Shown here: positions 12,616-52,073 of the stretch, one piece after another
Position numbering within the stretch: position 1 is the first letter of the stretch
How the letters are laid out: the number at the start of each line of letters is the position of its first letter
Source: Sphaerodactylus townsendi
Taxonomy: Eukaryota
Reading direction: 5' to 3'
DNA: 64,000 nt
NCBI RefSeq assembly: GCF_021028975.2
Contig: NC_059426.1
Coordinates: forward strand, 67,270,001-67,334,000
Notes under the pieces: generated by a model
What the model saw: only the letters and a program-made list of their open reading frames with translations
Databases searched by the model: none
Told to the model about the DNA's origin: nothing
Program-made: the position numbers and the translations under genes

Positions 12616-13587
12616 CTACTCTTCTCCCTCATCTTCATCCTCATAAGAGTCAATGCCCACCTCTTCATAGTCCTTCTCCAGGGCAGCCATGTCTTCCCGA
12701 GCCTCAGAGAACTCCCCTTCTTCCATGCCTTCCCCCACATACCAGTGGACAAAGGCCCTCTTGGCATACATCAGATCAAACTTGTGGTCCAGGCGGGCCC
12801 AGGCCTCAGCAATGGCAGTGGTGTTGCTCAGCATACAGACTGCTCGCTGCACCTTGGCAAGGTCTCCTCCAGGAACTACAGTGGGGGGCTGGTAGTTGAT
12901 GCCCACCTTGAAGCCTGTGGGACACCAGTCTACAAACTGGATGCTGCGCTTGGTCTTTATGGCTGCAATAGCAGCATTGACATCCTTGGGTACTACATCA
13001 CCCCTGTACAAAAGGCAGCAAGCCATGTATTTGCCATGGCGGGGGTCACATTTCACCATCTGATTGGATGGCTCAAAGCATGAATTTGTGATCTCAGCCA
13101 CAGACAATTGCTCATGATAGGCCTTCTCTGCAGAGATGACTGGGGCATAAGTGGCCAGAGGAAAATGGATACGTGGATAGGGCACTAAGTTTGTCTGGAA
13201 TTCTGTCAGGTCTACATTCAGAGCTCCATCAAAGCGTAGGGAGGCAGTGATAGAGGACACAATTTGGCTGATAAGGCGGTTGAGGTTTGTGTAGGTTGGG
13301 CGTTCAATGTCCAGGTTCCTGCGGCAGATATCATAGATGGCTTCATTGTCTACCATGAAAGCACAATCTGAGTGCTCAAGGGTGGTGTGCGTGGTGAGGA
13401 TGGAGTTGTAGGGCTCCACAACAGCCGTAGAGACTTGTGGAGCTGGGTAAATTGCAAATTCCAGCTTGGACTTCTTGCCATAGTCAACAGAAAGCCGTTC
13501 CATTAACAGAGAGGTGAATCCTGAGCCGGTGCCTCCCCCAAAGCTGTGGAAGACCAAGAATCCTTGGAGTCCTGTGCATTGGTCAGC
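12616..13587 (-). CDS. TUBA4A: TUBA4A exon 4
   Basis: [23 protein letters not shown]...[16 protein letters not shown]. Confidence 0.97.
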
Positions 13588-15217
13588 CTGTTGAAGACCC
13601 CAAGAGAAATTCTGCTAAATATCAGACAATTCCTGCCTGCACATAAATATATTATTTAGACCCACATCAGGCATTTATTCCTCCATCCATAAACTTTAAA
13701 TTTCCTTTAATTTGAATACAGCAATTAACTAGTTGCTCATCTAGCTCCCCAGGAGACTAGGTCATACACACTTCACATATCACCATGAATGGCATTTCTG
13801 TCCCTTCTACTGTATAGAACAAGTAGCTCTTCAAAGCCAGGGCACAGTATAATCACTTGTACTGCTTTTGTAGCTGTGAAACTTTGCAATGGACAGGTGT
13901 TATTTGTTCTGGGGGAGTGACCTGCAATTCCTACCTTTCTCCTCACTCCAGTATACATCATGTAGCAGGGTTTTCTTTTTACAAATAAAACTTGCCCTTA
14001 TTTTAGGAGCTGCACTCACAAGGCTTTGACACAAATGAAGAGAGCTGCAGAAGGCACATTTCATGTATTGATTGTACTGCAGGGAGTCTAAAAAGAGGGA
14101 TGGAGATTAAGTAGTGCAACAAGAAAGAAGAAATTGTGGACGGGTATTTGAGGTGAAAGGTGGCTATGGAGGAACCTCAGTATTCAATATTAGAACAGGC
14201 TGTGTGTTGTTAAGAGGAGGGAGAGGAAAATGCCAGAAAGACTAGAGTTGGGGGGCGGGGGGTAAAGAAAGTGGGTCAAAAGAAAGCAGTGGTCTGAAAG
14301 GGAGGGATGTAAGCAAACAAGTAACTCAAGAAAAGAGCAGCCAAACAGAGAGCAGCCAAACAGAGAGCAGAATTGGGGCAGAAGTATACATAGGGCCAGG
14401 AAGAACTGTGTGTTATTGGCAGGAATGCAGCTGGCAAACAAGGGGACAGAGGATCACTAAGTTCAGAGGCTAGTTTTCAAACTGCATTCTAGTTGGAGTT
14501 CCCTGGTTCTTCAAGAAGAATATATGCACGGTCAGATGAACCTATGTGAAGGGTGCTCTACCACCTTCCTTGACAATTCTTCCTCTGTCATGTGTAACTG
14601 GATGAGTATGGTTTGTTCATTTCATAAAAAGCAACAATGAGACACAAAAGACCTAGACAACTGCCCTACATGAAGAGGGTGTGCATCTTGGAATGTGCTC
14701 AATAATACAGCACACTGGCTTGCATGGCAATAGTTAGGTGTTGTTTAGACGAATACACATGAAAGAAACTCGTTAAATTATATAGCTTGAACATTAATAA
14801 TTTAGATTCTGGCAGGTAAATTTTCTAATGGTGGCCTCTATGTTCACGGGAGCATTGGGCCAGCTGTATTAAAAGACATAATGAGTACCAGTGAGCAGGC
14901 TGGGAAGCCTGACACTTACATAGTGACTTGAAGCAACCAACTGACTGTTTGATTGCAAGCTTCTAATACAGCCTCTACAGCACAACTTCCTTTAATAGGA
15001 GATGTGGAACAAAGAAATGGGTACATATGGAGGAGCAGCTCGGGATGTGGTCTTTGCCACACAGATAGACGTGGCAACGCTAGGTTATTGCTAGGTTCAG
15101 AATTAGCCATTCTCAACCTATTAGCTATTCCCAGGAGGAAACCAAAACCTCTTCCATTTCTATAAGCTTCCCAAATGTCCTCTCCTCCCCCTCCACACAC
15201 ACACACTATATCTATAC

Positions 15218-15366
15218 CAGTTTCCGGATCCTGTCCAACACCAAGTCGATGATTTCTTTGCCAATAGTATAGTGCCCACGGGCATAGTTGTTGGCAGCAT
15301 CTTCCTTGCCAGTGATCAGCTGCTCTGGGTGGAAAAGCTGACGGTAAGTGCCAGCACGAACCTCAT
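15218..15366 (-). CDS. TUBA4A: TUBA4A exon 3
   Basis: [33 protein letters not shown]...RIRKL; 149 nt. Confidence 0.96.
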
Positions 15367-15879
15367 CTAGAAAAGAAATAAAGAGGTGGGGTGCCAGAAA
15401 AAGGTTCAGTGTAGTAGATGATTTCAAACCCTTAACATAAGCGAGCAAGCAGGTTGATAAATCAACGAAGGCATCTTGAATATACCGAATAAGGATTCTT
15501 TTAAGAAATCAACAAGGACAGATGAACTTCCTGGAAGAGCACTCTGCCTTCCAAGGCTACTCTTCCCCTGCCATGCATAAATGCAGGAGACTATTGGTTG
15601 AGCATGTTGCGTTAAATTCATGCAGGGCAACAGGAGACCCAACAACTGGAAGGCATGGATGGAAGGCATGGCTTGGTTCAACCACTTCAGAATCTTGAGT
15701 CTTCTCAATATCTGTGCCTTAAATTAAGGTTAAATTAAGGCAGTACAGCCTTGGTCAGTAGTTAGTTTTGACAGAAGGACACAAAGAGACGTTAATGGGA
15801 AGTTTGGGTTTCCCCCCTGGCTTGCCGTCAAATCCCACTTCTACACCTGCTGACAATCCTCAGGACTGCTCACTGGAGA

Positions 15880-49412: not shown

Positions 49413-49764
49413 AAAAAACAAAACAAACAGAGAAGAATGTAAAAACTGAAATTACTCCTGGATTAGTGACTCTGATGAGATTTTCCTTTAGTTTTGAGGC
49501 CATCTGTATTCTTCTAGATCATGTTCTGCTGAACGTGACATATGGAACCACTAAAAGTATGGCAATGACAGGAGTTTCAGAATCTTTGCCGGAAAGTCTT
49601 TGAGACAGAAATGTTAAATATATTTCTCACTTGATGTATGATGTTAAATGAGGGAAAATTTATTTACTTATATTAGTCATCTTAATGTTGAAAATTATAG
49701 TTCCAGCAGCACCATAAACAGCTGCATATCCCATACTATTTAAAAATGACTTAATTTAATAGAG

Positions 49765-50354
49765 TGTAGTCGACCCACGTGGTCAGCGTAAGAACGAGAC
49801 GAGACGCGGAGATAACATCGCGGCCCTTCCCCAGGCGACGGTGAGCAGGGTGGAGGTTCGAGGATTCCCGGGTTTCGGCACCAGCTTGTAGTCGACCCAC
49901 GTGGTCAGCGTAAGAACGAGACGAGACGCGGAGATAACATCTGGTGGAGATCGCCAGCAGCGGGAGCCCGGAGGTCCGTGTTCCTAGCGAGTCTCCCGCG
50001 TGCTGGTTCCTGGCACCTTTTATTGTTATTCTATCGGGGGCGTGTAGGAGGGAGGACCGGGGGGAGTTCCGGGAGAGCTGGCCGGGGAAGCGGGGAGGAG
50101 TCAGGGGAGATCATCATGTGATGCATGATCTCACCTGGCCTACGTGCTTGAGGAGCGTAATGGCGATCTGGAGCCTAATCCTGACCTGGGGGCAAGACCA
50201 TTGTCCCTGCGCCCGGTGACTGAGCCAGACAGTTCATGACCCGTGACTCATAGGGGGATGAGGAGTGGGGGTGCGGTGCGACCAGAAGGCCGTAGGTCCG
50301 TTGGCGTCCCAACGTTCTACCACGGTGCTGCTGGGTCAGCAGTGCATTACTACA
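49765..50354 (-). mobile_element. Internally deleted endogenous retrovirus (ERV2-like): 5' LTR + PBS(Phe) + end of 3' LTR
   Basis: TGTAGT...ACTACA termini; 6-bp TSD ATAGAG; 55-bp duplicated U5 end at 49765-49819 and 49887-49941; PBS TGGTGCCGAAACCCGGGA at 49883-49866. Confidence 0.85.
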
Positions 50355-51089
50355 ATAGAGAGTTTAAGAATTCACATAATGTTGGTCAGGGGCCTATCTA
50401 CTTGAAATGGTGCAGTTGGAGGCTGGTGAACGGGGCTCGACCCATTCACAATCTCCACATGGAGATTGCTAATGGAGCTGGCTGGCTTGTCCTGCCACAT
50501 CTCCACGTGGAGGTCAAGTGTGGGGCCAGCCCCATGCCAGACCTCCTCTATGCCACTGAGTACTTGTATCTGTGTTGACTAAAGAGAAGGAAAAGAATGG
50601 ACACAATCCAAGACAATGCACTGAAAGCAGTAGGATGGAATTTAGGCCAAAATCCTCTGCTCATTTGTTTGGGAATAAATACTACTGACCGTTGTAATCT
50701 CACATATAGCAAACCTCACTGAAGGAGCTTACTTCCAAATAAACATACATAAGTTTGGGTTATTAGTCATCACTAATTTAGGTGTAATTAACTTCAACTG
50801 GATTATGCCTAATGTGTTCAGAAGAAAATGGAGGTATGTGAAAAAGAATAAGTAGAGACTTCTATATACATAGTGGCAAATTCTTTGAAGTACAAGATTT
50901 TTCTAGAATGAAAAATTCTTCCTACAGACTTGTTGGTCAGAAATAGTATTGAATTCCAATGCTTAAATTCAAGGATTTAATGATGGAGCTCCTTGAGGAA
51001 TTCAGAAAGAGAAAGATTGAGTAAAACTCTAGAACACTTCAACCCACCACTCCTTAATTCATTTCCTTCTTTTATTTCCTGTTCCATAG

Positions 51090-52073
51090 GCTGACCAATG
51101 CACGGGGCTCCAAGGATTCCTCATCTTCCACAGCTTTGGGGGAGGCACCGGCTCGGGCTTCACCTCTCTACTGATGGAACGACTTTCTGTTGACTATGGC
51201 AAGAAGTCCAAGCTGGAATTCTCCATTTATCCTGCCCCTCAGATATCAACAGCTGTCGTGGAGCCCTACAACTCCATCCTCACCACACACACCACCCTTG
51301 AGCATTCAGATTGTGCTTTCATGGTGGACAATGAAGCCATCTATGATATCTGCCGCAGGAACCTGGACATTGAACGCCCAACCTACACAAACCTGAATAG
51401 GCTGATAGGCCAGATTGTGTCCTCCATCACTGCCTCTCTGCGCTTTGATGGAGCTCTGAATGTAGATCTGACAGAGTTTCAGACCAACTTAGTGCCCTAC
51501 CCACGCATCCACTTCCCTCTAGCCACTTATGCCCCAGTCATCTCTGCAGAGAAGGCCTATCATGAGCAATTGTCTGTGGCTGAGATCACAAATGCTTGTT
51601 TTGAGCCAGCCAATCAGATGGTGAAATGTGACCCCCGCCATGGCAAATACATGGCTTGCTGCCTTTTGTACAGGGGTGATGTAGTACCCAAGGATGTCAA
51701 TGCTGCTATTGCTACCATTAAAACAAAGCGCACAATCCAGTTTGTAGACTGGTGTCCCACAGGCTTCAAGGTGGGCATCAACTACCAGCCCCCCACTGTA
51801 GTTCCTGGAGGAGACCTTGCCAAGGTGCAGCGAGCAGTCTGTATGCTGAGCAACACCACCGCCATTGCTGAGGCCTGGGCCCGCCTGGACCACAAGTTTG
51901 ATCTGATGTATGCCAAGAGGGCCTTTGTCCACTGGTATGTGGGGGAAGGCATGGAAGAAGGGGAGTTCTCTGAGGCTCGGGAAGACATGGCTGCCCTGGA
52001 GAAGGACTATGAAGAGGTGGGAACAGATAGTATTGAGGGAGAAGGAGAAGAAGAAGAAGGCGATGAGTACTAG
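51090..52073 (+). CDS. Second alpha-tubulin exon 4
   Basis: [23 protein letters not shown]...EEEEGDEY*. Confidence 0.97.

What the first reader, a model, noticed from the sequence alone, without database searches (positions are those of the whole stretch)
12656..52021. Gene-conversion signature between the inverted tubulin paralogs, broken exactly at isotype-defining codons
Seen: 12656-13155 (TUBA4A exon 4, reverse-complemented) and 51522-52021 (second tubulin) differ at only 12 of 500 positions by hand count. One 287-bp stretch (12656-12942 vs 51735-52021) has a single mismatch, and there are perfect runs of 103 bp and 72 bp. Eleven of the 12 differences lie in two short patches holding the four amino-acid differences (positions 294/299 S vs A; 334 A vs T; 340 S vs T). 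Identity stops abruptly at the C-terminal tail. Exon 3 is only about 88% identical and I saw no intron similarity. The 5' half of exon 4 shows the same halos of synonymous divergence around replacement sites. Inference: the duplication is old, and recurrent ectopic conversion homogenises the genes except where selection rejects tracts that overwrite isotype residues. This would give a natural map of which residues matter functionally.
Basis: partly seen in the sequence, partly recalled or inferred. Interest (0 to 1): 0.82.

Follow-up and report, generated by a model that had tools for sequence, protein, structure and literature searches.

The report
Gene conversion between gecko alpha-tubulin neighbours
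Two old, head-to-head alpha-tubulin genes (TUBA4A and its TUBA4B/"alpha-1D" neighbour) in a gecko-like genome have repeatedly copied parts of their last exon onto each other; this is a clean example of a well-known process, and the few short stretches that escaped copying hold the residues in which the two proteins differ.

Summary
In the last 500 coding bases before the C-terminal tails, the two exon 4 copies differ at 12 positions. Eleven lie in two islands of 16 and 22 bp that hold all four amino-acid differences. Perfect runs are 72, 103, 125 and 161 bp.

This is neither chance nor nucleotide constraint. Four-fold-site divergence between the copies is 0.04 here, against 0.78 in exon 2 and 0.38-0.40 in exon 3 and the 5' part of exon 4. 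The same stretch differs by about 0.5-0.6 from cobra and turtle TUBA4B. Exons 2 and 3 group gecko B with cobra B (orthology). The 3' part of exon 4 groups gecko A with gecko B (98/98), and the AU test rejects orthology (p=0.019).

So an old duplication followed by interlocus gene conversion is well supported. A mole shows the same pattern, and published Cas9 work shows TUBA4B-to-TUBA4A conversion in human cells.

That selection preserves the islands is plausible but unproven. Three of the four TUBA4A-side residues recur in other TUBA4A orthologs. Enrichment p is 0.002-0.02.

This is a known kind of event. The scan has not found it on other DNA.

The parts
12616..13587 (-). Gene A (TUBA4A-type) exon 4, codons 126-448 plus stop; tail ...[13 protein letters not shown]
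   Evidence: Intact translation; splice acceptor seen; Tubulin_C domain E=2e-49 on the 3' part
15218..15366 (-). Gene A exon 3 (149 nt)
   Evidence: AG/GT borders and translation
17236..17458 (-). Gene A exon 2 (223 nt)
   Evidence: AG/GT borders and translation; Pfam Tubulin domain
24954..24956 (-). Candidate ATG-only end of gene A exon 1, in a CpG-rich stretch; not verified
   Evidence: ATG|GTRAG with a TATA-like motif upstream; CpG o/e 0.56 and GC 0.64
44716..44718 (+). Gene B (TUBA4B / 'alpha-1D' type) start codon at the end of exon 1
   Evidence: ATG|GTGAGT below a TATAAAA box; flank conserved with the cobra and turtle loci
47174..47396 (+). Gene B exon 2
48726..48874 (+). Gene B exon 3
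51090..52073 (+). Gene B exon 4, codons 126-452 plus stop; tail ...[17 protein letters not shown]
   Evidence: Intact translation; 99% identical to turtle 'tubulin alpha-1D'
13084..13155 (-). Converted tract 1 in A (72 bp, 100% identical to B 51522-51593)
13068..13083 (-). Divergence island 1 in A (codons 294-299; 4 of 16 nt differ from B 51594-51609; S294, S299)
12965..13067 (-). Converted tract 2 in A (103 bp, 100% identical to B 51610-51712)
12943..12964 (-). Divergence island 2 in A (codons 333-340; 7 of 22 nt differ from B 51713-51734; A334, S340)
12656..12942 (-). Converted tract 3 in A (287 bp, one mismatch at 12817, matching B 51735-52021)
   Evidence: K4 0.023
51522..52021 (+). The same three tracts and two islands in B (islands at 51594-51609 and 51713-51734; single mismatch at 51860)
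12616..12655 (-). Isotype-specific C-terminal tail and stop of A, where similarity ends
52022..52073 (+). Isotype-specific C-terminal tail and stop of B; 43 of 52 nt match the turtle TUBA4B tail

Best explanation
The window carries two intact alpha-tubulin genes head-to-head about 30 kb apart. Gene A is TUBA4A. Gene B is the functional ortholog of the gene called TUBA4B in bats and humans and 'tubulin alpha-1D' in turtles and ruminants. The pair dates from before the split of mammals and reptiles. In this squamate (gecko, per other notes of the scan) lineage, non-reciprocal homologous repair between the inverted copies has repeatedly overwritten parts of exon 4. The most recent events homogenised the last 500 coding bases before the tails, at roughly 5-8% of the gecko-snake silent divergence. 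Older or patchier events affected the 5' part of exon 4. Exons 2 and 3, all introns and the C-terminal tails were not affected. Shown: the mosaic, its statistical significance, the ordinary silent divergence of the same stretch between orthologs, and the tree conflict between exons 2/3 and exon 4. Inferred: the two unconverted islands (codons 294-299 and 333-340) survive because conversion products that replace the TUBA4A-type residues S294, (S299), A334 and S340 with B-type A, A, T and T, or the reverse, are removed by selection. I put this last step at about 50-60%, given that conversion occurred.
For: Twelve differences in 500 bp, in the pattern described. K4 between A and B is 0.78 (exon 2), 0.38 (exon 3), 0.40 (exon 4 5' part), 0.042 (exon 4 3' part) and 0.023 (last 287 bp). 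In the 3' part, K4 between gecko B and cobra B is 0.53 and between gecko B and turtle B 0.62, so silent sites there are free to change. Cobra B has the same low GC3 as the window genes, which controls for base composition. Max chi-square p=2e-4; run test p=1e-5. Trees: exon 2 gives (turtle B,(gecko B, cobra B)) apart from gecko A. Exon 3 gives (gecko B, cobra B) at 80/91. The 3' part of exon 4 gives (gecko A, gecko B) at 98/98, and AU rejects gecko B + cobra B at p=0.019. No intron similarity. Tails are conserved with orthologs. Synteny is conserved. Islands: silent and replacement differences occur together; at codons 333 and 335 both copies differ from the C shared by the turtle and bird sequences (mole: G at 333, C at 335). 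The B states GCT294, ACC334 and AAA336 are shared with turtle B, and GCT294 also with cobra B. S294 occurs in 14 of 19 TUBA4A-tail proteins seen. A334 and S340 occur in mammal TUBA4A. P(>=4 replaced codons in 14 island codons) is 0.002-0.02. Parallels: mole (Galemys) TUBA4A and TUBA4B are 99-100% identical in exons 2 and 4 but 79% in exon 3, with distinct tails. A Cas9 break in human TUBA4A was repaired by conversion from TUBA4B in 40 of 96 clones (bioRxiv 10.1101/2021.12.16.472942).
Against: No second squamate TUBA4A and no close relative could be fetched, so the age of the islands relative to the flanks rests on distant orthologs and few sites. S299 is almost private to this genome, bird TUBA4A has T334, and turtle B has S340, so the island residues are not universal isotype markers. 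For the 5' part of exon 4 the excess A-B similarity is not significant on its own: 22/71 against 28/71 four-fold differences, and AU does not reject gecko B + cobra B (p=0.25). Two of the five multi-site islands in the 5' half hold no replacement.
Confidence: 0.85

Rival explanations
1. Conversion is real, but the islands are neutral leftovers: gaps between separate tracts, or patches restored by short-patch mismatch repair of one long heteroduplex. They hold the amino-acid differences only because any difference outside them was erased.
For: Silent and replacement differences must co-cluster under any mosaic conversion. Two of the five multi-site islands in the 5' half of exon 4 hold no replacement. 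S299, T334 in birds and S340 in turtle B show the positions are not fixed isotype markers.
Against: Both 3' islands hold two replaced codons each. With the 4-8% replaced codons seen in unconverted parts, the chance is 0.002-0.02. Three of the four A-side states recur in TUBA4A of other amniote classes.
Confidence: 0.35
2. Assembly or polishing artefact: reads of one copy were used to correct the other, inflating identity.
Against: The two copies sit 38 kb apart, inverted, each with its own introns, tail and flanks. Polishing cannot turn about 11% divergence into 0% over 100-160 bp runs while leaving 7 of 22 differences in between. The same pattern appears in an unrelated assembly (mole), and the human pair converts experimentally.
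Confidence: 0.05
3. Nucleotide-level constraint on the 3' part of exon 4 (an RNA element or codon selection) keeps both copies alike without any exchange.
For: Amino-acid sequence there is almost invariant in all alpha-tubulins.
Against: Orthologs differ at 38-42% of four-fold sites in the same stretch (K4 0.53 to cobra B, 0.62 to turtle B), against 4% between the two copies.
Confidence: 0.02
4. Gene B, or its exon 4, is a recent lineage-specific partial duplicate of gene A rather than an old paralog.
For: Birds do carry a young tandem TUBA4A-like pair that shares tail, intron 3 and 3' UTR.
Against: Here the tail, exon 2 and exon 3 of B are orthologous to cobra, turtle and mammal TUBA4B. The introns are unrelated. 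The islands inside the identical stretch carry deep divergence.
Confidence: 0.03

Closest known systems
Interlocus gene conversion / concerted evolution of linked vertebrate paralogs (for example TUBG1/TUBG2, PMC2720389; chicken beta-tubulin genes, Sullivan, Lau & Cleveland 1985, seen only as a reference in PMC2114543)
   Same: Old duplicates on one chromosome are more alike within a species than orthologs are between species. Similarity is mosaic and confined to coding sequence.
   Different: This pair is inverted and about 38 kb apart, and only part of one exon is currently homogenised. I found no paper in the held library describing evolutionary conversion between TUBA4A and TUBA4B.
Human TUBA4A/TUBA4B repair by gene conversion after a Cas9 break (bioRxiv 10.1101/2021.12.16.472942)
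   Same: The same gene pair, the same head-to-head layout, and the same mechanism (the paralog used as repair template).
   Different: That is a somatic, induced event with a degenerate TUBA4B. Here both genes are intact and the exchange is germ-line and evolutionary.
Peaks of divergence kept by selection against conversion (Teshima & Innan model; red/green opsin exon 5; reviewed in PMC3924837; GOT1 in Tigriopus, PMC3728101)
   Same: Short islands of high silent plus replacement divergence sit around amino-acid differences, within otherwise homogenised duplicates.
   Different: For the opsins the functional effect of the island residues is known. Here no functional difference has been tested, and support across species is partial.

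Membership tests
Alpha-tubulin, TUBA4A ortholog (gene A) | Tubulin GTPase and C-terminal domains, intact 4-exon structure | tested here: met
   Pfam PF00091 and PF03953; intact exons 2-4. Exon 1 is only a candidate.
Alpha-tubulin, TUBA4A ortholog (gene A) | Tail ...[11 protein letters not shown] without a terminal tyrosine; position next to STK16 and GLB1L | tested here: met
   Tail identical to mole TUBA4A. STK16 exons lie at 6.4-10.3 kb, with GLB1L beyond.
TUBA4B / 'tubulin alpha-1D' ortholog (gene B) | Head-to-head with TUBA4A, upstream of DNAJB2, tail ...[12 protein letters not shown] | tested here: met
   Layout. The same layout is seen in the mole and bat loci. The tail matches turtle, cobra and bat proteins.
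Interlocus gene conversion (concerted evolution) | Paralogs within the genome are closer than orthologs in the tract, while other parts of the gene group by orthology | tested here: met
   K4 table, trees and AU tests.
Interlocus gene conversion (concerted evolution) | Significant mosaic of silent divergence with sharp borders | tested here: met
   Max chi-square p=2e-4; run test p=1e-5.
Interlocus gene conversion (concerted evolution) | Not a recent segmental duplicate: flanks and introns are unrelated | tested here: met
Interlocus gene conversion (concerted evolution) | Both copies confirmed in raw reads | not testable with these tools
Selection-maintained divergence island (Teshima-Innan type) | A peak of silent plus replacement divergence centred on amino-acid differences | tested here: met
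   Islands 294-299 and 333-340. Enrichment p=0.002-0.02.
Selection-maintained divergence island (Teshima-Innan type) | Island states are older than the flanks and shared with orthologs of each paralog | tested here: inconclusive
   Holds for 294, 334 and 336, and partly for 340. Fails for 299. The cobra sequence has an assembly gap over island 2.
Selection-maintained divergence island (Teshima-Innan type) | Islands persist across related species or populations while the flanks are re-homogenised | not tested
   No close relative's sequence could be obtained. Runs of three related organisms exist.

The most novel reading that the evidence does not exclude
[quoted passage not shown] The parts it never erases, namely the C-terminal tail plus a handful of body residues at 294, 334 and 340, would then be the minimal set that selection keeps different. 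That would give a natural read-out of which non-tail residues define the TUBA4A isotype.
Probability: 0.3. Interest if true: 0.55.

Novelty: new member of a known kind. Interest (0 to 1): 0.4.

Why it matters
Most discussion of tubulin isotype function centres on the C-terminal tails. A gene pair that is constantly homogenised, except at the tail and at a few body residues, points to candidate isotype-specific positions that can be tested by simple residue swaps. It also warns that trees and dS values for TUBA4A/TUBA4B (and 'alpha-1D' annotations) are unreliable in exon 4. Finally, TUBA4B, a decaying gene in humans, is an intact gene and a sequence donor or acceptor in reptiles. The mechanism and the 'island' signature are textbook, so the gain is a good example rather than a new principle.

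Tried and rejected
(1) Turtle isoform P0015 was not on record; isoform X1 worked. No turtle TUBA4A lay within the 10 kb flank. (2) The bat locus holds only the 5' end of TUBA4A, so there is no bat pair. (3) The red deer 'TUBA1D' locus has a 5 kb N gap over most of exon 4 and no TUBA4A in the flank. It was unusable and the gaps were not filled. (4) A protein search limited to the tail gave one squamate, the cobra B gene. That means no read evidence, no relatives' sequences and no expression data. (6) Look-up of the exon 4 product of gene A read from its first ATG (codon 154): not on record. (7) Direction of conversion: in the last tract, 4 of 5 diagnostic sites carry the B-type state. That is too few sites, and it is confounded by AT bias, so I make no claim. 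(8) Without the cobra sequence, the grouping of gecko A with B in the 5' part of exon 4 looked strong (100/99). With the composition-matched cobra sequence it weakens (66/74, AU p=0.25), so I claim only older or patchy conversion there. (9) The bird upstream tubulin is a TUBA4A-like tandem copy sharing tail, intron 3 and 3' UTR. It is not usable as a TUBA4B ortholog. (10) PMC366973 and PMC2278071 are not held and are cited only through papers that list them.

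
Full report
OBSERVATION. Gene A lies on the minus strand, with exon 4 at 13587-12616. 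Gene B lies on the plus strand, with exon 4 at 51090-52073. Both translate without a stop. An ungapped comparison gives 47 differences in the first 432 bases of exon 4. The next 500 bases (A 13155-12656, B 51522-52021) hold exactly 12 differences. After that the tails cannot be aligned. The 12 differences sit at offsets 504, 506, 509, 519 (codons 294-299), at 623, 624, 629, 632, 635, 643, 644 (codons 333-340), and at 770. The perfect runs are 72, 103, 125 and 161 bp. All four amino-acid differences of this stretch (S/A 294, S/A 299, A/T 334, S/T 340) lie in the two islands.

ANATOMY AND CONTEXT. Exons 2 and 3 have proper AG/GT borders: A at 17458-17236 and 15366-15218, B at 47174-47396 and 48726-48874. 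Gene B's ATG ends exon 1 at 44716-44718, below a TATA box. For gene A only a candidate ATG at 24956 was found. Pfam finds the tubulin domains in the exon pieces. BLAST of one half of the window against the other finds the three exons (83.4%, 87.9% and 92-94%) and interspersed repeats, and nothing in the introns. Gene A ends ...[13 protein letters not shown], the TUBA4A tail. Gene B ends ...[17 protein letters not shown], which matches the turtle 'tubulin alpha-1D' and bat 'tubulin alpha 4b' proteins. STK16 and GLB1L exons lie beyond the 3' end of A and DNAJB2 exons beyond the 3' end of B, in the same order as in the mole and bat loci. Other notes of this scan call the genome a gecko. I did not test that directly. 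It fits the window's closer match to the cobra locus, including conserved non-coding pieces, than to the turtle locus.

NOT CHANCE, NOT CONSTRAINT. Four-fold-site divergence (Jukes-Cantor) between A and B is 0.78 in exon 2, 0.38 in exon 3 and 0.40 in exon 4 codons 126-269. It falls to 0.042 in codons 270-436 and 0.023 in the last 287 bp. A maximum chi-square scan of third positions places the break at codon 270, exactly offset 432 (permutation p=2e-4). The longest identical run gives p=1.5e-4. A Sawyer-type test on sites variable among four sequences gives p=1e-5. The same 500 bases are not conserved at the nucleotide level between orthologs. Gecko B against cobra B gives K4 0.53, and against turtle B 0.62. 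Identities are 90.0% and 87.2%, against 97.6% between the two copies. Cobra B has the same low GC3 (0.46-0.65) as the window genes, so shared base composition does not explain the result.

TREES. These were built exon by exon with IQ-TREE. Exon 2 gives (turtle B,(gecko B, cobra B)), with gecko A on the other side. Exon 3 gives (gecko B, cobra B) at 80/91. Exon 4 offsets 432-931 give (gecko A, gecko B) at 98/98. There the AU test rejects gecko B + cobra B (p=0.019) and rejects a B clade without gecko A (p=0.022). Exon 4 offsets 0-431 place gecko A inside the squamate B group (99/98; B clade without A rejected, p=0.007), but the order within that group is open (p=0.25). At the 37 exon 2 sites where A and B differ, cobra B sides with gecko B at 25 and with A at 10. 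In the 5' part of exon 4 the count is 20 to 23. I read the 5' part of exon 4 as older or patchier conversion. It holds one clean stretch, offsets 168-304, with 3 mismatches in 137 bp.

THE ISLANDS. Island 1 reads TCA TGC ... TCC in A and GCT TGT ... GCC in B. Island 2 reads GCA GCC ATA AAG ACC AAG CGC AGC in A and GCT ACC ATT AAA ACA AAG CGC ACA in B. At the third positions of codons 333 and 335 the two copies differ from each other and from the C shared by the turtle and bird sequences (the mole has G at 333 and C at 335). That needs at least two changes per site, so this is old divergence and not one recent mutation. GCT294 in gecko B is shared with turtle B and cobra B, and ACC334 and AAA336 with turtle B. 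On the A side, S294 occurs in 14 of 19 proteins with a TUBA4A tail, mostly from birds. A334 with S340 occurs in the three mammal TUBA4A proteins seen. S299 occurs in one hornbill only. Bird TUBA4A has T334, and turtle B has S340. Unconverted parts show 4-8% replaced codons. Under that rate, finding four replaced codons within the 14 island codons has p=0.002-0.02. A looser neighbourhood test gives p=0.016. This fits the known signature of selection against conversion, described for red/green opsins in PMC3924837 and for GOT1 in PMC3728101. It does not prove it. Any mosaic makes silent and replacement differences co-cluster, two islands in the 5' half carry no replacement, and patchy repair of one heteroduplex remains possible.

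OTHER LINEAGES. In the Pyrenean desman assembly (locus L007), TUBA4A and TUBA4B are 99.6% identical in exon 2. In exon 4 they are 100% identical in the 5' part and 99.6% in the 3' part, but only about 79% in exon 3. Their introns are unrelated and their tails distinct. That is the same process with different borders. It comes from a draft assembly with gaps, so I give it modest weight. Suboscine birds have a tandem TUBA4A-like pair that shares tail, intron 3 and 3' UTR. I treat it as a young duplicate, not as evidence. In human stem cells a Cas9 break in TUBA4A was repaired by conversion from TUBA4B in 40 of 96 clones (bioRxiv 10.1101/2021.12.16.472942). This shows the mechanism operates on this pair. 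Gene conversion among vertebrate tubulin genes has been reported since 1985 (reference lists in PMC2114543 and PMC2114845). Concerted evolution of TUBG1/TUBG2 is described in PMC2720389. Four full-text searches found no paper on evolutionary conversion between TUBA4A and TUBA4B.

RIVALS. Constraint at silent sites is contradicted. A recent partial duplication is contradicted by the orthologous tail and exons 2/3, the unrelated introns, and the deep islands. Against an artefact stand the separate unique flanks of each copy, the sharp islands with 7 of 22 differences between perfect runs, and the parallels in other assemblies. I leave it at about 5%.

TIMING (rough). The 3' part has about 8% of the gecko-cobra silent divergence, and the last tract about 5%, based on 3 and 1 differences. 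If the gecko-snake split is near 200 million years (from memory, not tested), the last events are on the order of 10-20 million years old, with wide error. Direction is unresolved: 4 of 5 diagnostic sites in the last tract carry the B state.

HOUSEKEEPING. Spliced models were never joined for any search. Exons were searched and analysed one by one by reference, and in scripts the codon split between exons 2 and 3 was left out. N stretches in the mole, cobra and deer loci were left as they are. No human contig was fetched.

VERDICT. An old duplication followed by recurrent interlocus gene conversion is well supported (0.85). Preservation of the islands by selection is a reasonable but unproven reading. 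This is a new, clean member of a known kind of event.

Noticed in passing
window 44716-52073 (+): Gene B is a fully intact alpha-tubulin with a TATA box, at the position where humans have the degenerate TUBA4B. Its closest named proteins are turtle 'tubulin alpha-1D' and bat 'tubulin alpha 4b'. The scan's note s1-740341 says the same.
   Followed up: partly
L007 5696-7830 (-) and 10001-23410 (+): In the Pyrenean desman, TUBA4A and TUBA4B are 99-100% identical in exons 2 and 4 but only about 79% (with gaps) in exon 3. B has Q128P and a tail ending in N instead of Y. This may be a decaying gene kept partly 'repaired' by conversion.
   Followed up: partly
L002 4037-8076 and 10001-13721 (likewise L003, L004): Suboscine birds carry two TUBA4A-type genes in tandem on the same strand, with identical tails. 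Exon 2 is 100% identical, and intron 3 and the 3' UTR are alignable. No B-type tail was seen within the fetched 10 kb flanks.
   Followed up: partly
window 15883-16164, 18641-18858, 20002-20232, 42590-42879, 44936-45173, 55578-55863: A family of interspersed repeats of about 220-290 bp (72-79% alike) lies in both orientations in the introns and flanks of both tubulin genes. It was not classified.
   Followed up: no
window 12326-12404 and 55092-55231: A 79-bp element just beyond the 3' end of gene A matches, at 87% and in both orientations, an overlapping palindromic site downstream of gene B.
   Followed up: no
window exons against L001, L002, L007 exons: GC3 of both window tubulin genes is 0.47-0.61 and of cobra B 0.46-0.65. 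In the turtle, bird and mole copies it is 0.63-0.90. This strong composition shift in squamates can mislead trees.
   Followed up: partly
L008 11310-11437: The cobra draft assembly repeats 28 bp of exon 4 on both sides of a 70-N gap, and lacks 88 bp of exon 4 at a 6-N gap. This explains the truncated 'tubulin alpha-1A, partial' annotation of what is really the TUBA4B ortholog.
   Followed up: yes
window 24000-24999: A CpG-rich stretch (GC 0.64, o/e 0.56) lies between the two genes, with a candidate TUBA4A first exon (ATG at 24956, minus strand). That would imply a first intron of about 7.5 kb.
   Followed up: partly
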